NCBI GenBank assembly: GCA_002269645.1
Contig: NIVC01001526.1
Span: 209,594-273,593, forward strand
DNA from: Macrostomum lignano
Taxonomy: Eukaryota
Length of the DNA: 64,000 bases
Direction of reading: 5' to 3'
A model generated the notes under the pieces. The model searched no databases and was not told the origin of the DNA. It saw only the letters and a list, made by a program, of their open reading frames with translations. Of this stretch, positions 10,201 through 62,395 are shown piece by piece. The position numbers and the translations under genes are program-made. How positions within the stretch are numbered: position 1 is the first letter of the stretch; each line of letters begins with the position of its first letter.

Positions 10201-10488
10201 TAGAATTGGGGATAGACAATTTGGGATATGGAATTAATGTACATATCCAATTTGAGATAGATAGGGATTAATGTACATGGAATTAATGTACATATCCAAT
10301 TTGAGATAGATAGGGATTAATGTACATGGAATTAATATGAGCACATGGATTATTACGACTACATATTGCCATATCACGCTTAGGATAGCGTTTTTGTATA
10401 CTACTTACTTCATTTTCAGATAGTAGTATAATTTGCGTTTTTTGCGTCAGAATTCTGAAAACCCGGCAGAATCTGCACATTACGTAGT
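1287..10488. mobile_element. Giant non-coding palindromic (foldback-type) element: arms 1287-5988 and 6037-10488, 48-bp spacer, 6-bp TSD ATGCAA
   Basis: Mirror-image ORF pairs (e.g. 5352-5543- / 6482-6673+, 1968-2156+ / 9619-9807-). Termini are ACTACGTAATGTGCAG...CTGCACATTACGTAGT. ATGCAA lies directly outside both ends (1281-1286 and 10489-10494). Confidence 0.85.
2630..3860 (+). repeat. ~250-bp tandem array (5 units) inside the left arm; 4 units in the right arm (~8165-9150)
   Basis: AGCAGGAAT recurs near 2635, 2896, 3146, 3392 and 3645, each followed by the shared CTAGAAATG...TTTCACAGTTTTT...AAAATGC.GACTTT...ATCAAAATCAGTAG block. Confidence 0.85.
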
Positions 10489-10512
10489 ATGCAATATGTG
10501 TTACACAATGTC

Positions 10513-10953
10513 GACAATATGAGTAGCATGATGTAGACAATATGAGTAGCATGATGTAGACAATATGAGTAGCATGATGTAGACAATATGAGTAGCATGA
10601 TGTAGACAATATGAGTAGCATGATGTAGACAATATGAGTAGCATGATGTAGACAATATGAGTAGCATGATGTAGACAATATGAGTAGCATGATGTAGACA
10701 ATATGAGTAGCATGATGTAGACAATATGAGTAGCATGATGTAGACAATATGAGTAGCATGATGTAGACAATATGAGTAGCATGATGTAGACAATATGAGT
10801 AGCATGATGTAGACAATATGAGTAGCATGATGTAGACAATATGAGTAGCATGATGTAGACAATATGAGTAGCATGATGTAGACAATATGAGTAGCATGAT
10901 GTAGACAATATGAGTAGCATGATGTAGACAATATGAGTAGCATGATGTAGACA
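10513..10953 (+). repeat. 23-bp minisatellite (GACAATATGAGTAGCATGATGTA)
   Basis: About 19 identical tandem units starting just outside the right end of the palindrome. Confidence 0.95.
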
Positions 10954-11791
10954 ATATTTGTCACACAATGTCGAGAATATTCGTCACACGATGTAGACAA
11001 TATGTGTCACACGATGTAGACAATGTGTCACACGATTACTCTAACAACTGCCTAACAGCTTTTTTTCCAGCGTTACATTCTCAACTTTGGCGTATACTAT
11101 AAGTAGTATTCGAGCGACAAAATCAGTTTGTTTTCTTGCATTCCGAATCGAGACAACAATTTCGAATACATTTAGATATTCTTCCCGGCTGTACAATCAA
11201 TAGGAAGTCGCTAAGAATGCGGGAGTTCTTCCTCCTATTGCGGGTCGATATCTGCCTAAACACGTACCTACCCCTGACACTGTCAATGCAATTTCTCTCT
11301 TCCCTTGCTTTTTTTCCTGAGCTCTTTCTTTCAATTTCTGCTCTTTTCTCTCTCTCTCTTTCTCTCCCTTCTCTGTCTAGCAACAGAGCTAAGCTATTAG
11401 GAGGTGGTCAACGAGTTGACTTGTGTAACCAACTCTTGTGCACATATCGTGAGTTCGCAATATTCACTGCGTGACACCGCTAACACACACACGTTAACGC
11501 GCTATATATACTCACAGTCAGAGTTGAATATATAATTTTAAACTTGTCAATTGGACGATCGTTCATTCACAGTTGCAACTTCAGTCAGACCCCCGTCAGT
11601 GCACGGCCACTAACAGCTGCTAGGCGGGAGCTTTTCGATCCAATATTCCTATAGCTCTGTTGTTAAGGAAGAAGCTACGCAACTATAACGACTATTCCAT
11701 ACTAGCATTGTAGCTCCGGCGTTGGGGTTGGCGGTGACGGTTGCGTCTTCCTATCGTGTCTTTTCACTTCAATAATAAAATAAAAGCAGCA

Positions 11792-29467: not shown

Positions 29468-32400
29468 ATGACATCATCATCCATGTACTACAAAAAGCTA
29501 CTGCAGGATTTAAGTAAGTAGCAGGTTTTTTCAAAACCCTATTTAATTTTAAAGTAATAGTTTTAGTTGGATCTGCAATTAGCGTTCTATCCTCATGCAA
29601 CTCAAACAGAACAGTCCCAGCTAGATCGCATCCGTTTCGCCGCCTATCGAACAGCAATGAAACTGCGCTTCATCCAACGTCGAGTCAGCCTCCACCTGGT
29701 TGACCTGTACACCTTGATCGAATGCTTCAGACTGGCCCATTTTCACGTGCTCGAATATGATGCCGAGCTGAGCCCGGAACAGCTCGAACAGTTGCTATGC
29801 ACCCTGTACGATCAGTTGAACAAGCGGCTCGGGCTGGCCAACTCAGCCGAAGTGGCTGGCGCTCACGAGAACTACCTGCAGGAACTGGCCGGCATGCTGC
29901 ACGCTTGGCTGTTTGCCAGATCGCAGTTCGGCTTCGGCCAGCGAATGACCGCACTAGGCGCTAAAGTGGCCATGTCTGTACTGTGCAACGCTAAGCCTAT
30001 TGATAAATTGCGCTATCATTTCACGCTCATATGCGACCCGGTTACTGGGGTGCTAGATCGCACTAAAGCCCAGGCTTACACCATCGAACTGCTATCCTTA
30101 CCTGCCGGAGTATTCGAACAGAATAATTTCTATTACCAGCCGGACACCTGCTGCTTTCTGTCTCAGTGCGCCGGTCTGTTGCATTTCTTGGAAATTCTTC
30201 TAGCCGAAGACGCCGCTCCACAGCCGCTGCTCTGGCTGACGACATTTCATCGGCTGCAGACTACCGCCAGCCATCCAGTGAGGTGCTCGGTGTGCGGCCA
30301 GGAGCCGATATTGGGCTTTCGGTACAAATGCCAACAGTGCATCGGTTCGTTTAACCTGTGCCAGGAGTGCTTCTGGACCGGGGCGACTGCTGGCGGGCAC
30401 ACGCTCAACCACGAGGTTAAGGAGTACACCAGCTGGGTGAGTGGCGCTTGGCCAGCAGGTTGCTCGAAGTTTACATAAAGTGGGTTATGCCCAGCGCTAA
30501 GGGAATTCTGCTCATTCCGCTGACACCTGAGCGCACATACATGCGCGCCAGTACACATACATGCGCGCCAATACTGTACTTAGGCGCGCACTCAAATACA
30601 CACGCTCACACAGGGTGTACAGCGGGCCCTTTGACTTTCTAGTCGTCAGGCATGTCTGTACTCTCTCGATGCCTGTGTTTCAATTTAGAAACTCCATTGC
30701 GTCGATTATTGTAATCCCCTAATCGTAGTCTCAGAAAACAATTAAATTTATTAATTAACCTCCATCTAAGATCTTAGAGGCTGCAGAAAAGCAGAAATTT
30801 CAATTACAATTGCAGCAACATCCCAGTATCGATCAAAATGGCCCCCATATCGATTGAAGCAACCCCCAGTATCGATCGCAGCAACCCCCACCCATATCGG
30901 TCGTAGCAACCCCCATATCGATCGCAACAACCCCCATATCGATCGCAGCACCCCTATATCGATCGCAGCAACCCCCACCCATATCGATCGCAGCAAACCC
31001 AATATCGATCGCAGCAACCCCGACCCATATCGATTGCAGCAGCCCCCACCCATATCGATCGCAGCAACCCCCACCCATATCGATCGCAGCAACCCCATAT
31101 CGACCGCAGCAACCCCCACCCATATCGATCGCAGCAACCCCCACCCATATCGATCGCAGCAGCCCCATTATCGATTTTAGCAACCCCCACCCATATCGAT
31201 CGCAGCAACCCCCACCCATATCGATCGCAGCAACCCCAATATGGATTGTAGCAACCCCCACCCATATCGATCGCAGCAACCCCAATATCGATTGTAGCAA
31301 CCCTCACCCATATCGATCGCAGCAACCCCATATCGATCGCAGCAACCCCCACCCATATCGGTCGTAGCAACCCCCACCCATATCGATCGCAGCAACCCCC
31401 ATATCGATCGCAGCAACCCCCATATCGATCGCAGCAACCCCCATATCGATCGCAGCAACCCCCACCCATATCGATCGCAGCAACCCCCACCCATATCGAT
31501 CGCAGCAACCCCCATATCGATCGCAGCAACCCCCACCCATATCGATCGCAGCAACCCCCAAATCGATCGCAGCAACCCCACCCATATCGATCGCAGCAAC
31601 CCCAAAATCGATCGCAGCAACCCCCACCCATATCGATCGCAGCAACCCCCACCCGTATCGATCGCAGCAACCCTCATATCGATCGCAGAAATTCTAATCT
31701 CGCTATGAATAAAGTATCAGTTCTTCATAGAACATTTCTCTATTTTATATGCCTTCCAGTGATCAATAAGTCCTTTGAGCTACCGTATTGGTATAAATCC
31801 TATAGCAGCAGTTCATATAACGCTTGGAAACATGCCATGAACTTTGTTTGCATTGGCAGAGCTTGGGGATGAAGCGAGTACGTGTCGGAGACGAGATTGA
31901 GGATCAGTCAGCCACGTGATTGCTTTTTTTGTGGAGCTTTAAGTGGACATTCAATCGCTAAATTTGCGGTGTGTATAAAGTGCAGCAACTCTTGAAAAAA
32001 TGAGAATGAATGAACCGCGTCCTCGCTCAACAGGGCGGTTGGTTTAATACTATGTAGTTGGGCACTTGTAAAGTCCTAGAATAGAATGAATAAGCTGTAA
32101 ACCTTTTAAGCCTATGCTCCACTTTTATCCGCATGGGACTCGGTATAAATATTTATACACAGCAAACATTGCTGTTCCGCTTGCTAGGCCTGTTGCTCTG
32201 TGCTTTTCCATCCATCTCGTTCATCGGTTTTGCTTCATAGCTACTGTTTCTATGCTTTTATATTGCAGGCATTTTCTTCTTTTAGTTTGGCTAACTATTC
32301 ATTGTTTGCGAATCAGTTGTTTTTGGAATAATTTTAACATCCGTTTACTGAAATGTTATCAGAGACTCTTCGAATTGGATCTGTGCATTTGAATAGCCTG

Positions 32401-43447: not shown

Positions 43448-46400
43448 ATGAGCAGTGGAATTCAACGGCCGAAAACTGCCGGCCCGAGTGGAGTTGGCTT
43501 GCAGCAGCGAACTGAGGCTGGCGGGCTGCCGAGAAGGTAAATGCATGTACAGTTGGTTTGGTCTTAAGTCAACTGTCTTAGATAAGTAAGCGTCAATTAT
43601 CTTAGAATTGTAAGCACCGACTGTCTTAGAAATGTAAGCGCTAAGTGTCTTAGAAGTGTAAGCGCCAAGTGTCTTAGAAATGTAAGCATCAACTGTCTTA
43701 GAAATGTAAGCATCAACTGTCCTAGTAGTGTAAGCATCAACTGTCTTAGAAATGTAAGCGTCAACTGTGGTAGAAATGTAAGCGTCAACTGTCTTAGAAA
43801 TGTAAGCATCAACTGTCTTAGAAATGTAAGCGTCAACTGTCTTAGAAATGTAAGCTTCAACTGTCTTAGAAATGCAAGCATCAACTAAGGTAGAAATGTA
43901 AGCGTCAACTGTCTTAGAAATGTAAGCGTCAACTGTTTTAGAAATGTAAGCGTCAACTGATTTAGAAATGTAAGCGTCAACTGTCTTAGAAATGTAAGCA
44001 TCAACTAAGGTAGAAATGTAAGCTTCAACTGTCTTAGAAATGCAAGCGTCAACTGTCTTAAAAATGTAAGCGTCAACTGTGTGGTAGAAATGTAAGCGTC
44101 AACTGAGGTAGAAATGTGAGCGTCAACTGTCTTAGAAATGTAAGCGTCAACTGTGGTAGAAATGTATGCAGCAACTATCTTAGTAATATAATTAGCAGCA
44201 ATTTTCTTAGAAATGCAGGCGCTAAGTGTCTTAGAAATGTAAGCTTCAACTGTCTTAGAAATGCAAGCATCAACTGTCTTAGAAATGTAAGCATCAACTG
44301 TCTTAGAAATGCAAGCATCAACTGTCTTAGAAATGTAAGCTTCAACTGTCTTAGAAATGCAAGCGCTAAGTGTCTTAATAGTGTAAGCGCCGACAGTGAA
44401 TATTGAGTTGTAAAGTTGCGCTTCTATCTCAAAGATTTCCTGGAATCCTACATTGAATCCTGCCTCTAGCTTAGAATATTGCACTTTAGTTCTGAGACCA
44501 TGCAGCTCCAATTTCGTAGACAGTTTTTGTTTAAACACGGCATTGCTCAAACAGAGGTCCATAGCTGCAGTCTAGACTTTCACTTCGCTTAATGAGTTGG
44601 ATTGGGTTTTGAATTTATTTAACCAGCAGGCACTCTCATACACGCGCTCACACAAGGTGTACAGCTGCCCACTGACTTTTTAATCGTCAGTCATGTACAC
44701 AATCTGTGCCTTGGGGGGTTGGCCCTCAAGGCCGTTAATTGCACGAGCAGAGCCAAGCCGAGATTCCAATTTAGCCCTAAATTAATGCGACTGCACTTGG
44801 AATCGAGCCTGGGCCGCTGGCATGGTATATCCCGCACCCTCTGCTAGCAGTAAGCTATTGCTGAGTCATCGTGTTGCACTTTTCCCCACTCCAGATCCGG
44901 ATCCCAGATGTCGCTGAGATCCACCGCGGACGCCTCCTGCTGGCCGCAGTACGTGCCCATCCGGCGGGCGCCCAGCGCGATGAAGAGAAATATGGAGATT
45001 CAGGTAGGGTGTGATGAGAAGCGGATCTTCTGATGATTTTCTAGTTTTCGATTCCTTGGGTTTTTTCGGTGAGAATTTAAGTCGCTATTCGATAATCACC
45101 TGGATTTCCTAACTCTCTCTCTCTTCGATAATTATCCGGATTCTAAAAATTCTCTGTAAGTCGAGAGTTCAACCAGCAACATATTCGCATATCTGAATTT
45201 CAAAAATCAAATTAGGTAACCATAATATTTAGTGAATTAAACTCTTATACTACTAATAAACTCAATTTACTAAGTAGTTAATCCCCGCTATAATAATTAA
45301 TTAAACGCAGACCGACGCGGCCCTGCCGCCGGCCATGGGTGTCAGCGCCGGCCAGGGCACCGAGGCTGATCAGCCGGGCGGCCTGGCGTCAGGCGGTGGC
45401 ACCCTTTTCTACCCCTACTATGTGCCTGGAGTTCAGAGCGGACCGACTGCTGGCAACGGACAGAAGCAGCAGCAGCCATTCGTGCTCTTGTCTCCATGGC
45501 AACTGCCCGGCTACCAGACCCTACCGGTGCTGGACCCGGCTCAGCTGCGCCTCCTTGAGCCGGCGCTGTCGCAGTCGCGCTCGCAGCAGCAGGCGCATCC
45601 ACTGGATGGATCGCCGGTGTTTCGTTCGGGTCGAAACGGCAGCTGCTGGCGACACGTGCGGCAGTGCACCGGCAATTTGGGCAACAATATCATGTTTATT
45701 GACGGTGAGTGGCGCTGCCTCTACCTACCGGGTTTGTGTGCGAAGATATGAAAAGATGACACTGATATCTGACCTCTGACCTCTGACATCTGACTTCTGA
45801 CACTGACATCTGACCTCTGAAACTGACATGTGACCTCTGACACTGACATCTGACCTCTGAAACTGACATGTGACCTCTGACACTGACATCTGACCTCTGA
45901 CACGAACGTCTGACCTCTGACACCGACATCAGACCTCTGACACCGACACCTGACTTCTGACACTGACATCTGACCTTTGACACCGACATCAGACCTCTGA
46001 CACCGACACCTGACCTCTGACACCGACACCTGACTTCTGACACTGATATCTGACCTTTGACACTAACACCTGACTTCTGACACCGACATCTGACACTGAC
46101 ACTGACCAACATCTGAAACTGACACTGACACTGACCGACATCTGACACTGACACTGACACTGCACGGCATCTGACACTGACACTGACATCTGACTTCTGA
46201 CACTGACATCTGACTTCTGACACTGACATCTGACTTCTGACACTGACATCTGACACTGATATCTGACTTCTGACACTGATATCTAACCTTGGACACTGAA
46301 ATCTGACTTCTGACACCGAAACCTGACTTTTTACACTGGAATTTTTCAGCATATTTATCGAATCTAATTAAAATGGGCAACTACTATTAGTAGCAAAAAG

Positions 46401-47644
46401 TCACAGTTTCAGCAGCAACTCACCCCCCCCCCCGACCAGGCAACGTCAAGGAGGACGACTGTCGCCGCTTTCCTCCGCACGGCTACCCGGGAGCTGCCGG
46501 GTTCGGCGGCCTCAGCGTCAACAGCCGCCTGGCGCCAAAGGTGCAGCCGCGCAACGCCGCCGGAATCCCGCTGGGCTCCGCCAGCCGAGGCGATTTGTAC
46601 AGATCGCAGGCGCTGCAACGTGCCAAAACTGGAACCAAGTACTGGTTCGAAGATAGGCAGCCCGCACCGCGTGAGCTGAGGGGGGAGCTGTGGTTAAGGG
46701 GTCAGATCAGGCCCATGCATTCATAACCAACTGCTTCCGGGTAGCTTAGTCAGTGTGTCTAACAGGAATTTTCTCATGTCTCTAGCAGGTAGCTTCTCAT
46801 GTCTCTAGCAGGTAGCTTCTCATGTCTCTAACAGGTAGCTTCTCATGTCTCTAACAGGTAGCTTCTCATGTCTCTAACAGGTAGCTTCTCATGTCTCTAA
46901 CAGGTAGCTTCTCATGTCTCTAACAGGTAGCTGCTCATGTCTCGAACAGGTAGCTGCTCATGTCTCGAACAGGTAGCTGCTCATGTCTCGAACAGGTAGC
47001 TGCTCATGTCTCGAACAGGTAGCTGCTCATGTCTCGAACAGGTAGCTGCTCATGTCTCGAACAGGTAGCTGCTCATGTCTCGAACAGGTAGCTGCTCATG
47101 TCTCGAACAGGTAGCTGCTCATGTCTCGAACAGGTAGCTGCTCATGTCTCGAACAGGTAGCTGCTCATGTCTCGAACAGGTAGCTGCTCATGTCTCGAAC
47201 AGGTAGCTGCTCATGTCTCGAACAGGTAGCTGCTCATGTCTCTAACAGGTAGCTACTCATGTCTCTAACAGGTAGCTACTCATGTCTCTAACAGGTAGCT
47301 TCTCATGTCTCTAACTGGTGGCTTTCTCATGTCCCTAACAGGTAGCTTTTTATATCTCTAACAGGAAGCTTCTCATGTCCCTAACAGGTAGCTTCTCACC
47401 TTCACTATGTAGCTTGTCATGTCTAACTGTTCTTTTCATACAGTCCTATTCAAACAGGCTTCTAGAGTCGCGTTCTATTCAAGTAATTAGCAAAGTTTCT
47501 ACTGATAGTAATGGAAGAAGGGCATGGTTATAATAGAAATTTATTATCACAAGAATCCGTAATTTATAACGATAATTTCTTCGCATTCCAGTCGTGCCCA
47601 ACACAATCCAAGGCAGAATAATGAAGTCTGGTTCGGCCTACTGA
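43448..47644 (+). CDS. Uncharacterised ~300-aa protein; exons 43448-43536, 44895-45003, 45311-45704, 46413-46670, 47592-47644
   Basis: Five GC-rich segments joined by GT-AG junctions with consistent phases (2,0,1,1) give a 903-nt open frame MSSGIQRPKTAGP...SRGDLYRSQALQRAKTGTKYWFEDRQPAPLVPNTIQGRIMKSGSAY*. No recognised domain. Confidence 0.7.
43570..44390 (+). repeat. 24-bp minisatellite (AACTGTCTTAGAAATGTAAGCGTC)
   Basis: Tandem units in intron 1 of the orphan gene. Confidence 0.93.
44625..44822 (-). mobile_element. Truncated copy of the tRNA-derived SINE
   Basis: Shares GCCGTTAATTGCACGAGCAGAGCCAAGCCGAGATTCCAATT...GACTGCACTTGGAATCGAGC with 28280-28370. Confidence 0.8.
45757..46336 (+). repeat. 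~20-bp minisatellite (TCTGACACTGACATCTGACC)
   Basis: Direct observation. Confidence 0.92.
46772..47395 (+). repeat. 23-bp minisatellite (CTCATGTCTC(G/T)AACAGGTAGCT(G/T))
   Basis: Direct observation. Confidence 0.95.
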
Positions 47645-48299
47645 ACCGGAAGACGCAAGAAGAAAATCTCTGAAAAAATGAATACTTTTTTTGCGATGAC
47701 AGTCGTTGCAAAGGAATATAGCTAATTAACTATGCCTTGGGTTCTATTATTACGCTAGTGCTGTAATAGACAGCCCTTTAAAAGCGCATGTCCTCTCAAC
47801 AAGCGATTAAGTGATAGCGTTTCACGTATTTTTTGGTAGAAAAAATATATAGACTTTTTATTGCTTTGAATTTGGAATCCAGAAAATGTTTCGATAAAAT
47901 TTAGATAGGGTAATTTTCCGGAATGAAAAGTGCTGTTTTTACGAAATCTAGTTTCTTTTTCAGAAGGTAGATCTTCAACGCTAATACGGTAGAAATGTGC
48001 ACGCGCACTACAATTTGTCTAGTTTTTGCGCCTTGACTTCCCCTACCTGACAGAATTCTATCCTTTAATAAACATGCAGTTAAGCAAAAATCAAAAATCA
48101 CATAACTGAGTTTTCTTGATTTTTTCGCCCTTGTCTCTCAGGCTGCCTTTGAGTTTTGTGTCGCATTGTCTGTCATTATCTGTTCGGTTAGACCTCAGTC
48201 TGACGCAAATGGCTATTGTGTTTGAGGGAAGATTCTGGAAAATATGAAGTCAATATGATTGCAGTACATGTAGGAAATTACTTTGACTTAATTAGGGCC

Positions 48300-49326
48300 T
48301 ACTTGACACTCTTGAGTAACTTCTGTGTGCCACTCTTGAGTGACTTCTGTGTGACACTCTTGAGTGACTTTTGTGTGCCACTCTTGGGTGACTTCGGTGT
48401 GACACTCGCGAGTGACTTCTGTGTGACACTCTTAAGTGACTTTTGTGTGCCACTCTTGGGTGACTTCTGTGTGACACTCGCGAGTGACTTCTGTGTGACA
48501 CTCTTAAGTGACTTTTGTGTGCCACTCTTGGGTGACTTCTGAGTGCCACTCTTGAGTGACTTCTGTGTGCCACTCTTGGGTGATCTGTGTGCCACTCTTG
48601 GGCGATCTGTGTGCCACTCTTGGGTGATCTGTGTGCCACTCTTGGGTGATCTGTGTGCCACTCTTGGGTGATCTGTGTGCCACTCTTGGGTGATCTGTGT
48701 GCCACTCTTGGGTGATCTGTGTGCCACTCTTGGGTGATCTGTGTGCCACTCTTGGGTGATCTGTGTGCCACTCTTGGGTGATCTGTGTGCCACTCTTGGG
48801 TGATCTGTGTGCCACTCTTGGGTGATCTGTGTGCCACTCTTGGGTGATCTGTGTGCCACTCTTGGGTGATCTGTGTGCCACTCTTGGGTGATCTGTGTGC
48901 CACTCTTGGGTGACTTCTGTGTGACACTCGCGAGTGACTTCTGTGTGACACTCGCGAGTGACTTCTGAGTGCCACTCTTGAGTGACTTCTGTGTGCCACT
49001 CTTGGGTGATCTGTGTGCCACTCTTGGGTGATCTGTGTGCCACTCTTTGGGTGATCTGTGTGCCACTCTTGGGCGATCTGTGTTCCACTCTTGGGTGATC
49101 TGTGTGCCACTCTTTGGGTGACTTCTGTGTGCCACTCTTGGGCGATCTGTGTTCCACTCTTGGGTGATCTGTGTGCCACTCTTTGGGTGATCTGTGTGCC
49201 ACTCTTGGGTGATCTGTGTGCCACTCTTGGGTGATCTGTGTGCCACTCTTTGGGTGATCTGTGTGCCACTCTTGGGTGATCTGTGTGCCACTCTTGGGTG
49301 ATCTGTGTGCCACTCTTGGGTGATCT
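48300..49326 (+). repeat. 22-24-bp minisatellite (CTCTTGGGTGATCTGTGTGCCA)
   Basis: Direct observation; source of the 269-361-aa pseudo-ORFs. Confidence 0.96.
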
Positions 49327-49748
49327 GTTTGCGTGCACTGCTAAGTGAACTTTGGAGTAAAATCTGTGATCGAAGCTGTGTCATTTGCGATAAATGAAAA
49401 GTACTGCATGTGCTTTTAAAAGCCGGAAGTGACCTCCGTTGTAGTCAAAAGAAAAAATCAGTGAATGCTCAACTGAAGTGAGGCAATAGGTCCCCGACTC
49501 GGGGCCTACAACATGGCTAAGCAAAATCGCCAGTACACGGGTTTATTTTTCTGTCTAAAGTTGAACATTACTCAGCTTCTACAGTCGCTATGGATACGCT
49601 GGTCTAAGTTTAAGCGAGACGGAGCTAGCGAGGATGGTTAATAAAATAGCTGTCAGCAAGCAACACTAAGGTTAGTTAAAAACCTGTTTGCCAATTAGAC
49701 GATCAATAATTGAGTAGAGCCTCAACTATTTGATAGATGTTCTCAATC

Positions 49749-50541
49749 TCAACCGGTGCGAAGCATGTCGAACATCGTCCGAATCTTCTTCATTGACATT
49801 GTGCCAGAGTGGCGCTTCCGCAGCTCCTGATTGCTCGGCGATTGGCCCCGATGATGGAGCAGGAAGCTGCGAATCTTCTGCATCAGCTCACGACGCTGGA
49901 ATCGGATTATTGAATTGGCTTCTTATGTTTCTTGCTATTTTACATACCAAAGGCCCTAGAGTTGAGGCTCTCTACGAACTGTTTGAAGAGTTGAGGCTCT
50001 CATCGTAATGGAATTACGGAGATTTCAGGAGATTTTCGAAAAATCGACAGACAGAATTTTCACTCTCCATTTACTTTGAGGCTCTCGACGCTCTTACATT
50101 TATGTAGACCTTATTTAGGCTCCTACTTCTTTGCAAGACGAATCTTTCTACGCGTTGAGGCTCTCTATCTATAAACATCTCTAATAGCTGCAACAAAAGC
50201 TCTCGACGAAGCCTCCAAAAGTTTTGGACTCCTACGAGTCTCCCAAAAAATCGGGGCTCTCCACGATCGAACCTTTAGAGAGTTTAGGCTCTCGCCTGTT
50301 CTGTAAATCTACGATGATGCACGTAATACGCTCGTATTAGAGGCTCTCTACGAACCCGCCTGAGTAAAACTATTTTACTCACGCGCTCGAACTGGTCGTC
50401 AGTCGGAACAGAGCTAGCAGCGTCCGAGAAGTCGCCCTCGTTTTCAAAGTCGACTACGTTCGAAGCGCCATCTCGACTCTGCTGCGGCAGAGCCAGACAG
50501 GTAGCTGAGATAAAGCTCATGATGAGCAAAGAAGCAATCAT
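49749..50541 (-). CDS. Putative neuropeptide prohormone; exons 50541-50383 and 49895-49749; predicted amidated peptide HSGTMSMKKIRTMFDMLRT-NH2
   Basis: Signal peptide MIASLLIMSFISATCLA, acidic spacer, GTGAGT donor after FER (phase 0), CCAG acceptor. Exon 2 reads RRELMQKIRSFLLHHRGQSPSNQELRKR-HSGTMSMKKIRTMFDMLRT-G-stop. In-frame upstream ATGs also exist. Confidence 0.72.
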
Positions 50542-50654
50542 GATGACGCATCCCGTGCCGCTTTTGTGTTGCTGACCGAGCATTCTTGCAAAGTTCAGAT
50601 CCTGCATCAACGAAAGCATAGTGCAAGCGTAAGTTTGTGTCTCTTAAGGCCACC

Positions 50655-51270
50655 TACCCCCATTGATTTCAGGTCCTTCCTTTGAAGTGCCTACAACCCC
50701 CCATTGATTTCAGGTCCTTCCTTTTATGCGCCGACAGCCCCCTCATTGATTTCAGATCCTTCCTTTTATGCGCCGACAGCCCCCTCATTGATTTCAGGTC
50801 CTTCCTTTTATGCGCCGACAGCCCCCTCATTGATTTCAGGTCCTTCCTTTTATGCGCCGACAGCCCCCTCATTGATTTCAGGTCCTTCCTTTGAAGTGCC
50901 GACAATCCTATAGATTTAAGGTCCTTCCTTTAATGGGCCGACAACCCCCATTGATTTCAAGTCCTTCCATGTGCTGACAACCCCCCATTGATTTCAAGTC
51001 CTTCCTTTAATGTGCCGACACCCTCCCATAGATTTAAGGTCCTTCCTTTGAAGGGCCGACAACCCCCATTGATTTCAAGTCCTTCCTTTAATGTGCCGAC
51101 AACCCCCATTAATTTCAAGTCCTTCCTTTAATGTGCCGAAAAACCCCCATTGATTTCAGGTCCTTCCTTTGATGTGCCGACAACCTCCCATTGATTTCAG
51201 GTCCTTCCTTTGATGTGCCGACACCCTCCCATTGATTTCAAGTCCTTTGATGTGCCGACAACCCCAATTG
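50655..51270 (+). repeat. ~42-bp minisatellite (CCCCTCATTGATTTCAGGTCCTTCCTTTTATGCGCCGACAG)
   Basis: Direct observation. Confidence 0.92.
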
Positions 51271-54200
51271 ATTTTCAATTCTTCTTTTAAAGGACTCCAT
51301 GTTTTTCTTGCATTTTGCATCCTTTCAGACACCCACCGAATTCATGTAAACGAAGCGTAAAATTTCAAGTGTACTGTAGCTAAAAATCTGAGAAAAATTT
51401 CGATAACAAAACGCTAAACAAAGCCACGAGCTTCACAGCACTCAGCTGAGAAACAAAAAGTTTCTTACATAGTTGGTAACTGTTCCACTAATGTTTAAAG
51501 CATATCTGGGCAAAAATTTTTACTTTTAAGCTGGTTCTGCAAGCGGCTTAGGCCAAACTCAACTGCAAGAAATTGATGCAAGAAAAATAACTAGAAGCAA
51601 CAAGAAGGGGCCGGACCGGCCTGTCCATTGCACTTGTGGCAGCTGGTCCCCTCTGTAATCCCCCCCGGATAATGGCAATTGATTTGATCGCTTAAACCGC
51701 TTCTGTTTCTTTCCCAGACTCTGTCAATCAATACGGATTGGAATTTGAAAATAAGCAGACAGATGCAAGTAATATGCTTCATCGCTCCAGAAGAGACAAA
51801 AAAGCATATGCAAAAGTTCTAAATCAAATCCGCCTTGTCAAACTTACCAATAAGAAAATGGTCCACAGGATTATATTGGGTAAAGATCGAGAATTCAGTA
51901 ACGATTGCTCAGATTTTGTCTTGTACTGTCAAGAGTCGGCGTCTCTAAAGCGAGATTTTCTAGCATGCTTTTTATAGAGAGACTAGCTGATAGATATAAT
52001 TGTCAGCAAGGCGTGGCCCTGACCAATGGGGATTGAGATCTGGGACTGGGATCGAAGGCGGCTCGTATTTTCTATTACTAAATTAGGCAAAGAGACTGTC
52101 GCAGGTTTTGCACAGGATTCACAGAAAATATTCTGACTATAGTATCCTATTAATCCAGATTTTTTAAATTTAGGAAAACTTATAAACGCTCATATTTTAA
52201 AAAAAGACTTGATCTTTTAAAAAATTAGGTAGGATTTATCAAAACATATTTTAGAGTTTTCCACTAGGGATTTCTGAGAGAAAATCCACGATTCTTCTTA
52301 GAAAATCGTTTCTAAGAAACGACTCGGGTTTTCTGAGGAAAAACGTTAAACTTAGAACATAAGTTTTTCTAAGAATTTTAATTGGCTTTCTAAGAGACCG
52401 TCGATTTTTAATGACGTTATTATGATTTCTAAGAATAATAGTGGATTTATTACAAAAGTTCCACAGTTCTTTAAAACGCATTATATGCCTGCTAAGAGAT
52501 ACGACGTCGGTCTTGTGATAAAGTATCCGCATGATTTCTAAGAAATATCGGTAGGTTTTCTATGAAATAATATCCCGTTAAAAAATAATCGCTAACTTTT
52601 CACGAATAATCCCGAGGTTTCGATGCAGTATCTTGGGCCTTCTTACAAAAAAGCATCATCGGGTTTCAATGAAGTATCTAAGGATTTCTAAGAAATATGC
52701 TGGGTTTTCTAAGAAGCATCGTAGACAGTTGAAGAGATATCACCCGGTTTTGATAAGGTTTCACTGGATTTCTCCATGGGGTTTTCTAAGAAGCACCGCA
52801 GGTTTCCAATTTACAAGATAACACTGTGGTGTTGTATATTGTAACGGTAACTTCCAGTGGTCCTTAGTTCGAAGTTTGATTATGTATACTTAGGCTACCT
52901 CCTTTTTCCTTAATGAATCTTTATCAGCGGTTATTCAGACTACGGTTTCTCAGCGCCCACTGCTCAACAAGTTAATTAGCATATACTACTGTTCTCCCGA
53001 AAATGCAAATAAGCCCAACCAATCTGCACTCAGTCTGAATGAAGCTCAGCTGCAGCCTCGTCCTACTCAAAACAATTCTCGAGTGACAAGATGCCACTCA
53101 GTCAGATTAAAATTCGAATTCGATCTTGTAGTTGTCGGCATCAATTCGAAGAAAATTTCTGAAGACAGTCTGAAATTCTGTTTGACAGAATGTTAATTAT
53201 AGGCAGAACTTCGAGTCTTACCTGGGCTCAAACAGTCTGTAATTATATGACCGCTACATGCAGAAGGCAGAAGGAAGGCTGTCTGCAAAATCGTTGCAGC
53301 AAATTTTGCGACAATAGCCGGGGCCATTGCTATTCAGGAAGAAACAACAAGCGAGCAGCAGTTCCTAGGAAAATTGCTAAATTATAGTCATGCAGAACGC
53401 ATCTTCGCAAAGTTGAGGCGCCCGCAATGCACCTGCTCAGATGCCACGTCTCATTATAGTTTACGCTTCAAGTTGAAGCAGTCAGCATACCTGCCTAGAG
53501 CTGAGATCCCACAACTCACTGCTCAAAGTTTAAAATTTATTAAATCGATAAAATTTGGATCAGATAGAGTTTAGATTTACAGGTTCGAAAGCTATTTTTG
53601 ACAACAAAGCAGTGCGCCAATGCAGTGCCAAAACATCCGGCCATATTTAGACGTGAGGACATGACATGAGCCAGACAGCTCAGAGACTGAGTTTGCGTGC
53701 GTGCTGAGATCAAACAATTGAGCAATCAAGTTATCAGCTCGTGCTGCCTTTTACATTCCTTACTTGAACTGAGCATTCGGCTCTTTGATGCAAAGGTTTG
53801 ATGCAAAGCAAATCAGATATCGTCACACAGCACCATGCAGTGCCTTGGAGGGGTTTGGCTTTCATAGCTGTGAAGTCCGGATTGTTGCTGCAAAATGTTG
53901 ACAGAAATTGCTGTTTTGATTTAACAATAACTAGAACACATCTCACCGTGAACTGAACTTGCAAATAGGTTGACAAAACACACAGTTCTTCAGTTTACAA
54001 TTCAGAAGTTTAATAAGGTGAAGCTATAGGCAGTTCGGCTTCGTAATGCTAAAAAAGGAACTGAAAATTTCCGAAATCTCGATAACTAATTTTACAACGT
54101 CCTTAGCTTCTGGCTTATTTTAGTTGGCCCACGGGCAGCATCCCGTCTGTCACTGAGCCCGTTTAGCCAGAGCCCATGGAACAAGCCGCTGTGCTCATGT

Positions 54201-54373
54201 TAACAATGTCTGATTTATTATTAACTAATGCGTAACCGACTCCCGATCGCGGTGCAGCGGCCATAATAACAGTTTTGGAGGTCGTAAAACACGGCAGAAA
54301 TTTCTTCACCAACCGTGCATTATGCATGGCTGAGGTGAAGCGAACCTCTCGCTGACTGTGCGCCTGCAGTTCG

Positions 54374-58532
<4,159 letters not shown>

Positions 58533-61804: not shown

Positions 61805-62395
61805 ATGGTGCGTTATGGAACGGCTTTTGCTATGGCAGTCATTGCCGTTGTCTGCTTCTTGACGGTCGAGGCTCACGAAAGCAAGCGACGCTACAACTAC
61901 CTGAGGGACGCCATGCTGAGCAAGCGAGGCTACAACTACCTGAGGGACGCCATGCTGAGCAAGAGAGGCTACAACTACCTGAGGGACGCCATGCTGAGCA
62001 AGAGAGGCTACAACTACCTGACGGACGCCATGCTGAGCAAGCGAGGCTACAACTACCTGAGGGATGCCATGCTGAGCAAGCGAGGCTACAACTACCTGAC
62101 GGACGCCATGCTGAGCAAGCGAGGCTACAACTACCTGAGGGATGCCATGCTGAGCAAGAGAGGCTACAACTACCTGAGGGACGCCATGCTGAGCAAGCGA
62201 GGCTACAACTACCTGAGGGACGCCATGCTGAGCAAGCGAGGCTACAACTACCTGAGGGACGCCATGCTGAGCAAGCGAGGTTACAACTACCTGAGGGACG
62301 CCATGCTGAGCAAGCGAGGTTACAACTACCTGAGGGACGCCATGCTGAGCAAGCGAGGCTACGAATACCTGCATAAAGCAATGAGAGAAATCTAA
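61805..62395 (+). CDS. Multicopy neuropeptide precursor: signal peptide, then 12 x (G/R)YNYL(R/T)DAMLS and 1 x GYEYLHKAMREI, separated by KR
   Basis: Hydrophobic signal AFAMAVIAVVCFLTVEA. Every 13-aa unit ends in dibasic KR. Several differences between units are synonymous (CGA/AGA, GAC/GAT, GGC/GGT). A diverged terminal unit precedes the stop. Confidence 0.9.
   Translation: MVRYGTAFAMAVIAVVCFLTVEAHESKRRYNYLRDAMLSKRGYNYLRDAMLSKRGYNYLRDAMLSKRGYNYLTDAMLSKRGYNYLRDAMLSKRGYNYLTDAMLSKRGYNYLRDAMLSKRGYNYLRDAMLSKRGYNYLRDAMLSKRGYNYLRDAMLSKRGYNYLRDAMLSKRGYNYLRDAMLSKRGYEYLHKAMREI

What the first reader, a model, noticed from the sequence alone, without database searches (positions are those of the whole stretch)
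49749..50619. Cryptic two-exon prohormone yielding a 19-aa amidated peptide
Seen only after splicing: signal peptide, acidic spacer, RRR, a 23-aa peptide ELMQKIRSFLLHHRGQSPSNQEL, RKR, then HSGTMSMKKIRTMFDMLRT-G-stop. The two predicted peptides share an M(Q/K)KIR(S/T) core. Known: basic cleavage sites plus a terminal Gly are the prohormone convertase/PAM signature. I cannot assign it to a known family. Inference: a possibly undescribed helical neuropeptide.
Basis: partly seen in the sequence, partly recalled or inferred. Interest (0 to 1): 0.72.

Follow-up and report, generated by a model that had tools for sequence, protein, structure and literature searches.

The report
Orphan amidated-peptide precursor gene, Macrostomum
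This is a real two-exon gene of the flatworm Macrostomum lignano, already in GenBank as a hypothetical protein, that has the build of a small secreted hormone or neuropeptide precursor; the peptide matches no known family and nobody has shown what it does.

Summary
On the minus strand, exon 1 (50619-50383) joins exon 2 (49895-49749) through a GTGAGT...TTCCAG intron. The product is 127 aa: hydrophobic leader, acidic spacer, RRR, a 23-aa peptide, RKR, a 19-aa peptide, then Gly-stop.

It is not cryptic. The window is Macrostomum lignano contig NIVC01001526.1, and GenBank holds the same splice as hypothetical protein BOX15_Mlig009841g1. That annotation was built from RNA-seq. Two more copies exist in the assembly, with exon 2 identical in all three.

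Shuffling shows the layout is non-random. Two tribasic runs plus a terminal Gly occur in 0.11% of shuffles, and the charge segregation in 0.14%.

The best reading is a lineage-restricted precursor of an amidated secreted peptide. Neither the cell type nor the products are shown. The products could be a 19-mer amide plus a 23-mer, or one 45-mer amide.

UniProt automatically labels one copy "CRF domain-containing". I could not reproduce this with Pfam, two custom family HMMs or hhalign. No homologue turned up among 1.84 billion representative proteins, so conservation in orthologues is untested.

Support for a helix and for the shared core is weak (p about 0.08 and 0.03). Verdict: a new member of a known kind, of moderate interest.

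The parts
50583..50619 (-). Upstream in-frame ATGs (Met1 at 50619, Met5 at 50607) ahead of the annotated start Met13 (50583-50581). TTGATGCAG|G around 50601 looks like a 3' splice or trans-splice acceptor.
   Evidence: codon map. The GenBank CDS starts at Met13. The acceptor reading is my inference from the sequence.
50491..50583 (-). Predicted signal peptide, Met13-Ala43: n-region MLGQQHKSGTG, h-region CVIMIASLLIMSFI, c-region SATCLA, predicted cut before LPQQ.
   Evidence: Kyte-Doolittle 11-residue means of 1.9-2.7 over residues 21-43. AlphaFold helix over P0001 residues 10-30. Small residues at -3 (C) and -1 (A). SignalP was not available.
50386..50490 (-). Acidic spacer Leu44-Glu78 (LPQQSRDGASNVVDFENEGDFSDAASSVPTDDQFE), net charge -8.
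50383..50385 (-). Last codon of exon 1 (CGC, Arg79), the first Arg of the RRR site; the intron splits the cleavage site.
49896..50382 (-). Intron, 487 nt, GTGAGT...TTCCAG, GC 0.42. It carries six sense-strand copies of GAGAGCCT[CA][AT]A.
   Evidence: The intron length matches the annotated gene span. The paralogues have 491 nt.
49890..49895 (-). Arg80-Arg81, which complete the RRR tribasic site at the start of exon 2.
49821..49889 (-). Peptide 1, ELMQKIRSFLLHHRGQSPSNQEL (23 aa, no amidation signal); or the N-terminal half of a 45-aa peptide.
49812..49820 (-). RKR tribasic site (Arg105-Arg107). Whether it is cleaved is not known.
   Evidence: Internal basic clusters in annotated ELH/DH44 peptides.
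49755..49811 (-). Peptide 2, HSGTMSMKKIRTMFDMLRT (19 aa), predicted to be C-terminally amidated; neutral monoisotopic mass 2269.1316 Da as the amide.
49749..49754 (-). GGT TGA: Gly127 (amide donor) and the stop codon.
49542..49748 (-). 3'UTR of about 200 nt, ending in AATAAA at 49547-49542; nearly identical in the two paralogous loci.
50657..51274 (.). 41-bp tandem repeat (15.3 copies) ending about 40 nt upstream of the first ATG. It leaves almost no unique 5' flank and is also present upstream of both paralogues.

Best explanation
Window 49749-50619 (minus strand) is copy g1 of the Macrostomum lignano gene Mlig009841. It is a transcribed two-exon gene for a 115-127-aa secretory precursor. Shown: the reading frame, the splice, the public RNA-derived gene model, three near-identical genomic copies, and a non-random prohormone layout. 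Inferred: the leader is removed after Ala43. In the regulated secretory pathway, PC2-type convertases cut after RRR (79-81) and probably after RKR (105-107). A carboxypeptidase trims the basic residues. Peptidylglycine amidating enzymes convert ...LRT-Gly into ...LRT-amide. The bioactive product is then the cationic C-terminal peptide HSGTMSMKKIRTMFDMLRT-NH2, released with ELMQKIRSFLLHHRGQSPSNQEL, or the uncut 45-mer amide. It most likely acts as a lineage-restricted neuropeptide or peptide hormone on a GPCR. It belongs to no family that sequence methods can recognise.
For: The sequence and splice are confirmed. P0001 (PAA66841.1) is an identical spliced protein, with two further copies as P0002 (PAA57451.1, PAA82544.1). 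The GenBank annotation of NIVC00000000 derives from a genome-guided RNA-seq assembly made with StringTie, TACO and TBONE (PMC5730564). Exon 2 is 147/147 identical in all three copies. The only amino-acid changes within the annotated protein lie in the leader (SL to CF). The intron shows 10 mismatches and 4 gap positions in 491 columns. A hydrophobic leader is followed by the charge split -8 / +10. Two tribasic runs plus a terminal Gly occur in 0.11% of shuffles. GC content separates exons from intron, and AATAAA lies 201 nt after the stop. AlphaFold places helices over both peptide cores. M. lignano has a PC2 homologue expressed in the nervous system whose knock-down is lethal (PMC4490696). 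A predicted amidated NPF-type precursor from M. lignano is on record.
Against: There is no evidence of the tissue of expression and no detection of any mature peptide. No orthologue was found: the only hit among 5.8 billion clustered and 1.84 billion representative proteins is the gene itself. Conservation of the RKR...G-stop frame is therefore untested. The three copies are too similar (about 2% intron divergence) to show purifying selection; about 3 changes would be expected in exon 2 and 0 were seen. The hydrophobic stretch (residues 24-44) is long enough to be a membrane anchor instead of a cleaved leader. Amphipathicity (p = 0.08) and the internal repeat (p = 0.034) are marginal.
Confidence: 0.6

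Rival explanations
1. RKR is not cut. The product is one 45-residue amidated peptide, ELMQKIRSFLLHHRGQSPSNQELRKRHSGTMSMKKIRTMFDMLRT-NH2. It would be a very derived member of the CRF / DH44 / egg-laying-hormone family and would act on a secretin-type (class B) GPCR.
For: UniRef names A0A1I8HJI8 (copies g2/g3) 'CRF domain-containing protein'. The stretch between RRR and Gly-stop is 45 aa, at the very C-terminus of the precursor and amidated, as in CRF-family peptides of 36-47 aa. Family members carry internal basic clusters within the peptide as annotated: oyster ...AHRKRF..., Aplysia A-peptide ...ARRRC..., Lottia ...NKRRE.... Many lophotrochozoan members end in ...LLRL-amide or ...LLSL-amide, against ...MLRT-amide here. 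Flatworms have secretin-type receptors resembling diuretic-hormone and PTH receptors (PMC3261222).
Against: Pfam gives no hit at E <= 10. An HMM of 32 nemertean, annelid, mollusc and arthropod DH44/ELH peptides scores 2.7 bits, and 690 of 5000 shuffles do as well. A vertebrate CRF plus insect DH HMM scores 0.4 bits, with 1052 of 5000 shuffles as high. hhalign probability is 0.4%. The family's best-conserved feature, the N-terminal (L/F)S(V/I)xxxLxxL(A/S)D motif, is absent. phmmer against the PDB, which holds CRF and urocortins, finds nothing. One caveat: true mollusc and annelid members also score only -1 to 13 bits against the vertebrate+insect HMM, so these tests have low power across phyla.
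Confidence: 0.12
2. The peptide is a non-neuronal secreted effector, such as a host-defence (membrane-active) peptide or a gland or seminal-fluid peptide. It would be made from the classic 'leader - acidic propiece - basic site - cationic amidated peptide' precursor.
For: The acidic propiece (-8) neutralises a cationic C-terminal part (+10 including the sites). The 19-mer has net charge +3 (one more as the amide) and 7 of 19 hydrophobic residues. Its best 14-residue window has a hydrophobic moment of 0.53. Orphan status is typical of fast-evolving defence and reproductive peptides.
Against: Amphipathicity is not significantly above shuffles (p = 0.08). Methionine-rich, Thr/Ser-interrupted sequence is not typical of lytic peptides. 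Nothing links the gene to glands or gonads.
Confidence: 0.13
3. The gene is a small orphan protein (secreted whole, or anchored by its hydrophobic N-terminus). Its basic clusters and terminal Gly are not processing signals, so no bioactive peptide is made.
For: No family, no orthologue and no expression data. The hydrophobic segment of about 21 residues could span a membrane. Among the three copies the whole locus is equally conserved, 3'UTR included, so nothing singles out the peptide region.
Against: The combination of two tribasic runs and a terminal Gly is seen in 0.11% of shuffles, and the charge segregation in 0.14%. The intron sits inside the first cleavage site, so exon 2 is exactly RR + peptides + Gly + stop.
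Confidence: 0.15

Closest known systems
CRF / diuretic hormone 44 / egg-laying hormone peptide family (Pfam PF00473; lophotrochozoan DH44/ELH precursors in Thiel et al. 2021, PMC8557429)
   Same: A peptide of about 45 aa at the C-terminal end of a small precursor, released at a basic site and ending in Gly (amide). Predicted helical segments. Internal basic clusters are tolerated in the family. The C-terminal ...MLRT-amide loosely recalls ...LLRL-amide. UniProt carries an automatic 'CRF domain' label.
   Different: The conserved N-terminal LS(V/I)...L..L(A/S)D motif and the NR..L..(I/V/L)-amide end are absent. No support comes from Pfam, two custom HMMs or hhalign. A Gly-Gln-Ser-Pro-Ser break sits in the middle, and there is a full RKR site.
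Flatworm npp/spp prohormones (Collins et al. 2010, PMC2953531; McVeigh et al. 2009 and Koziol et al. 2016, neither held in the library)
   Same: Small, lineage-restricted precursors with a leader, basic sites and an amidation Gly. The same processing machinery applies (PC2 homologue in M. lignano, PMC4490696).
   Different: The motifs LRTG, KIRS, KIRT and MLRT are absent from the supplements of Collins 2010 and from the neuropeptide collections of Thiel 2021. The McVeigh and Koziol lists could not be read, so prior naming as an npp cannot be excluded.
Pigment-dispersing-factor-type precursors (my recollection of the family; not aligned here)
   Same: Overall plan: leader, associated peptide, basic site, an 18-20-aa amidated peptide as the last element of a precursor of about 100 aa.
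   Different: No sequence resemblance and no Pfam hit.
Cationic amidated host-defence peptide precursors of the temporin/dermaseptin type (architecture only; from my own knowledge)
   Same: Leader, acidic propiece, basic processing site, short cationic peptide, Gly amide donor.
   Different: No homology. Amphipathicity is only marginal. A second peptide and a second tribasic site are present.

Membership tests
Peptide prohormone / neuropeptide precursor (generic class) | N-terminal cleavable signal peptide | tested here: met
   Heuristic only. There is a basic n-region and a hydrophobic core with Kyte-Doolittle means of 1.9-2.7. AlphaFold models it as a helix. The c-region is C-L-A before LPQQ. 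SignalP was not available, and a membrane anchor is not excluded.
Peptide prohormone / neuropeptide precursor (generic class) | Peptides flanked by di- or tribasic convertase sites | tested here: met
   RRR (79-81) and RKR (105-107). At least two tribasic runs occur in 1.8% of shuffles.
Peptide prohormone / neuropeptide precursor (generic class) | C-terminal Gly as amide donor | tested here: met
   ...LRT-GGT-TGA. Tribasic runs and terminal Gly together occur in 0.11% of shuffles.
Peptide prohormone / neuropeptide precursor (generic class) | A spliced mRNA with this frame exists | tested here: met
   Indirect. The GenBank protein PAA66841.1 uses the same junction, and that annotation was built from RNA-seq (PMC5730564). 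I did not see the reads themselves.
Peptide prohormone / neuropeptide precursor (generic class) | Peptide region and processing sites conserved in relatives | tested here: inconclusive
   The three in-genome copies have identical exon 2, but the whole locus is 98% identical. No orthologue is in the databases.
Peptide prohormone / neuropeptide precursor (generic class) | Expression in neurons or endocrine cells, and detection of the processed, amidated peptide | not testable with these tools
   No expression or peptidomic record was found.
CRF / DH44 / ELH | Match to the family profile (Pfam PF00473 or a profile of family peptides) | tested here: not met
   Pfam: nothing at E <= 10. Custom HMMs: 2.7 and 0.4 bits, within the shuffle range. 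hhalign probability 0.4%.
CRF / DH44 / ELH | N-terminal (L/F)S(V/I)xxxLxxL(A/S)D-type motif needed for receptor activation | tested here: not met
   The motif is the consensus of alignment A1, xxxLSxxxxLxxLxD. The peptide instead starts ELMQKIRSFLLHH.
CRF / DH44 / ELH | A 36-47-aa amidated peptide at the C-terminal end of the precursor | tested here: inconclusive
   Met only if RKR stays uncut (45 aa).
CRF / DH44 / ELH | Activates a CRF/DH44-type class B receptor | not testable with these tools
   Only the literature shows that flatworms have class B receptors resembling diuretic-hormone and PTH receptors (PMC3261222).
Secretin/glucagon/PACAP and PTH peptide families | Profile or pairwise similarity beyond the N-terminal His-Ser (or the FLLHH string) | tested here: not met
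   No Pfam family. phmmer of the 46-aa C-terminus against all PDB chains at E <= 10 gave nothing.

The most novel reading that the evidence does not exclude
The uncut 45-residue amide (or the His-Ser-initiated 19-mer amide) is the missing ligand of one of the orphan secretin-type receptors of flatworms, those resembling diuretic-hormone or PTH receptors. It would be a CRF/DH44/ELH-type or other class B hormone so derived that only an automatic SMART/InterPro-type label hints at it. That would put a class B peptide system in an early-branching flatworm that can be manipulated genetically.
Probability: 0.08. Interest if true: 0.7.

Novelty: new member of a known kind. Interest (0 to 1): 0.35.

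Why it matters
Macrostomum lignano is a transgenic, regenerating flatworm model, and the neuropeptide catalogues of flatworms are incomplete. A confirmed amidated peptide with no relatives would add one signalling molecule to test, by RNAi and receptor pairing, for roles in behaviour, reproduction or regeneration. All three gene copies share an identical exon 2, so one dsRNA would hit them all. If the weak CRF/class B lead were true, it would help to fill a gap in the evolution of secretin-type signalling in Spiralia. As it stands, this is a plausible but unproven orphan precursor that is already in the public annotation. Its value is as a candidate, not as a surprise.

Tried and rejected
**Homology searches**
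- The word-indexed search of 5.8 billion clusters found only the gene itself.
- Exhaustive phmmer against 1.84 billion representatives also found only the gene itself.
- No orthologue or distant relative could therefore be aligned.

**Family assignment**
- Pfam hmmscan of P0001, P0002 and the 46-aa C-terminus gave no family at E <= 10.
- phmmer against the PDB gave nothing.
- Two resemblances recalled from memory were treated as chance, because searches give no support: His-Ser-Gly-Thr against the HSxGT start of secretin-family peptides, and FLLHH against FFLHH of PTHrP.

**Motif look-ups**
- LRTG.., KKIRT, QKIRS and MLRTG were absent from Thiel's neuropeptide collections.
- The same kinds of motif were absent from the Collins 2010 supplements.

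**Literature**
- 'Mlig009841' appears in no main text, nor in the supplements of PMC5816591 and PMC12896417.
- McVeigh 2009 and Koziol 2016 are not held.

**Other tests**
- The selection test across the three copies lacks power, because intron divergence is only about 2%.
- The bacterial promoter/terminator scan is irrelevant for a eukaryote and showed nothing.
- I ran no further search on class B receptors. The word index would return arthropod and vertebrate receptors first, and M. lignano hits were unlikely to be listed.

Full report
**What is in the sequence.**
- An ATG lies at 50619, and exon 1 ends with CGC at 50383.
- The intron is 487 nt, from GTGAGT (50382) to TTCCAG (49896).
- Exon 2 runs 49895-49749 and ends GGT TGA.
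- The 384-nt CDS encodes 127 aa: MLSLMQDLNFARMLGQQHKSGTGCVIMIASLLIMSFISATCLA | LPQQSRDGASNVVDFENEGDFSDAASSVPTDDQFE | RRR | ELMQKIRSFLLHHRGQSPSNQEL | RKR | HSGTMSMKKIRTMFDMLRT | G | stop.
- The intron falls inside the first tribasic site (R|RR), so exon 2 is precisely RR + peptides + Gly + stop.
- Without splicing, the frame stops 32 codons into the intron.
- GC content is 0.53 (exon 1), 0.56 (exon 2), 0.42 (intron) and 0.39 (first 200 nt of the 3'UTR); GC3 is 0.67. An AATAAA lies 201 nt after the stop, at 49547-49542.

**Where it comes from, and whether the gene is known.**
- A search of 5.8 billion protein clusters returned one hit: P0001, 115 aa, 100% identical from Met13 onward. It is 'hypothetical protein BOX15_Mlig009841g1 [Macrostomum lignano]' (PAA66841.1, UniRef A0A267EZB9).
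- Its contig, NIVC01001526.1 of assembly GCA_002269645.1, matches the window at 100% identity across the 10,835 bases fetched around the gene.
- The annotated gene span of 835 nt, less 348 nt of CDS, gives the same 487-nt intron.
- The genome paper states that the GenBank annotation was derived from a genome-guided RNA-seq transcriptome (StringTie, TACO and the TBONE boundary pipeline) (PMC5730564).
- The splice therefore rests on RNA data rather than ab initio prediction, although I did not see the reads myself. The gene is not 'cryptic'.
- Two further copies, g2 and g3 (P0002: PAA57451.1, PAA82544.1), lie on contigs NIVC01002487.1 and NIVC01000463.1.
- In a three-way alignment, exon 2 is 147/147 identical in all copies. 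Exon 1 differs at 3-4 positions: two non-synonymous changes in the leader (SL to CF), one synonymous change, and one upstream of Met13. The intron shows 10 mismatches and 4 gap positions in 491 columns.
- This fits the known redundancy of the DV1 genome. It gives no usable test of selection: about three changes would be expected in exon 2, and none was seen.

**Is the layout more than chance?**
- The hydrophobic leader has Kyte-Doolittle means of 1.9-2.7 over residues 21-43, with a small-residue C-L-A motif before LPQQ.
- It is followed by a spacer of net charge -8 and a C-terminal part of net charge +10.
- In 200,000 shuffles of the 84-residue pro-region, at least two tribasic runs appeared in 1.8% and a terminal Gly in 6.0%. 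Both together appeared in 0.11%, and an equally extreme charge split in 0.14%.
- The shared core M(Q/K)KIR(S/T) is real but weak evidence of an internal duplication (score 21; p = 0.034).
- The hydrophobic moment of the 19-mer is 0.414, against 0.238 +/- 0.117 for shuffles (p = 0.08).
- A single-sequence AlphaFold model (mean pLDDT 64) places helices over the leader, over DDQFERRRELMQKIRSFLLHH, over NQELRKR and over MKKIRTMFDMLRT. The pLDDT is about 82-85 in the two peptide cores.
- 'Helical' is thus plausible but not established.

**What it most likely is.** The best explanation is a small secretory precursor processed by prohormone convertases and amidated at its C-terminus.
- Shown: the gene, its splice, its copies and its non-random anatomy.
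- Inferred: leader removal after Ala43, cleavage after RRR and RKR, carboxypeptidase trimming and amidation. These steps would give HSGTMSMKKIRTMFDMLRT-NH2 (2269.13 Da) plus ELMQKIRSFLLHHRGQSPSNQEL (2747.43 Da).
- The machinery is present. An M. lignano PC2 homologue is expressed in the nervous system and is essential (PMC4490696). A predicted amidated NPF-type precursor from this species is on record.
- That the producing cells are neurons is an inference from the class of gene. No expression record was found.

**The CRF lead.** UniRef names the g2/g3 entry 'CRF domain-containing protein', an automatic label. If RKR were left uncut, the product would be a 45-aa amide at the precursor's C-terminus, which is the format of CRF, insect DH44 and molluscan egg-laying hormone.
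- I collected 32 mature DH44/ELH peptides of nemerteans, an annelid, molluscs and arthropods from the supplement of Thiel et al. 2021 (PMC8557429).
- Several of them carry internal basic clusters within the peptide as annotated (oyster ...AHRKRF..., Aplysia A-peptide ...ARRRC..., Lottia ...NKRRE...). An RKR is therefore no proof of cleavage.
- The similarity tests, however, are negative:
  - Pfam gives nothing at E <= 10.
  - The 32-peptide HMM scores 2.7 bits, and 690 of 5000 shuffles do as well.
  - A CRF plus insect DH HMM scores 0.4 bits, with 1052 of 5000 shuffles as high.
  - hhalign gives a probability of 0.4%.
  - The family's N-terminal LS(V/I)...L..L(A/S)D motif (consensus) is missing.
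- A control shows the limits of such tests. Genuine mollusc and annelid members score only -1 to 13 bits against the vertebrate+insect profile.
- I therefore do not file the peptide in this family, but keep 'one long class B-type hormone' as a rival at about 0.12.
- Flatworms do have secretin-type receptors resembling diuretic-hormone and PTH receptors (PMC3261222).

**Other rivals.**
- The plan 'leader, acidic propiece, basic site, cationic amidated peptide' is also that of host-defence and gland peptides (about 0.13).
- The gene could be an orphan small protein whose basic runs are not processing sites (about 0.15).

Both are separable from the main reading by in situ hybridisation and peptidomics.

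**Comparison with what is known.**
- No relative exists among 1.84 billion representative proteins.
- There are no motif matches in the neuropeptide collections of Thiel 2021 or in the supplements of the planarian prohormone study (PMC2953531).
- The two flatworm catalogues most likely to have named it, McVeigh 2009 and Koziol 2016, are not held. Prior description as an 'npp' cannot be ruled out.

**Verdict.** It is a new, unassigned member of a very familiar kind of gene, already present as a hypothetical protein in public annotation. Interest is 0.35.

**Seen in passing.**
- About 11 kb away, at 61805-62395 on the plus strand, lies a cleaner candidate that is not in the public protein collections. 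It has a 23-residue leader (MVRYGTAFAMAVIAVVCFLTVEA) followed by 12 tandem copies of KR-GYNYLRDAMLS and a divergent last copy.
  - The repeat unit is 39 bp, 96% matched.
  - Seven synonymous against three non-synonymous codon differences separate the copies from their consensus.
  - AATAAA lies about 65 nt after the stop.
- The intron of the main gene carries six sense-strand copies of GAGAGCCT[CA][AT]A. Eight matches occur in the window against 2.4 expected.
- A 41-bp tandem array abuts the 5' end of the gene.

Noticed in passing
window 61805-62395 (+): An unannotated ORF of 196 aa with a signal-peptide-like start (MVRYGTAFAMAVIAVVCFLTVEA), then 12 tandem copies of KR-GYNYLRDAMLS and a divergent last copy (GYEYLHKAMREI). 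The unit is 39 bp at 96% matches. Seven synonymous against three non-synonymous codon differences separate the copies from their consensus, and AATAAA lies about 65 nt after the stop. It looks like a multi-copy, non-amidated peptide precursor. The exact sequence is not in the 15-billion-protein collection, and only an irrelevant weak hit was found. Its motifs are absent from the neuropeptide collections searched. It was probably dropped from GenBank because transcripts overlapping repeats were filtered out.
   Followed up: partly
window 49896-50382 (-), intron of the gene: Six sense-strand copies of GAGAGCCT[CA][AT]A within 487 nt. The whole window holds 8 matches against 2.4 expected, and no shuffle reached 8. 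They sit in a loosely repeated context...TTCGTAGAGAGCCTCAACTCT..., and are almost fully kept in both paralogues. This may be a degenerate intronic minisatellite or a regulatory motif; its function is unknown.
   Followed up: partly
window 50657-51274: A 41-bp tandem repeat (15.3 copies, 87% matches) ends about 40 nt upstream of the first ATG. The gene therefore has almost no unique 5' flank. The same array lies upstream of both paralogues, with different copy sequences.
   Followed up: partly
window about 50596-50610 (-): CTTTCGTTGATGCAG|GATCTG resembles a 3' splice or spliced-leader acceptor between Met5 and Met13. This could explain why the public CDS starts at Met13 rather than at the first in-frame ATG. 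About 39% of M. lignano genes are trans-spliced.
   Followed up: no
window 48292-49384, 54163-55612, 10283-11000, 30766-31677 and others: Long ORFs that are open in several frames on both strands are products of short tandem repeats (22-bp unit at 49000-49332; 10/20-bp unit at 54493-55491), not genes. The genome is reported to be about 15% simple and tandem repeats.
   Followed up: no
window about 44749-47644 (+) (L001 7940-10835, minus in the locus): A called gene with a 291-aa product converges tail-to-tail on the peptide gene. The same neighbour (291-292 aa) follows both paralogous copies, so the duplication covers more than the peptide gene.
   Followed up: no
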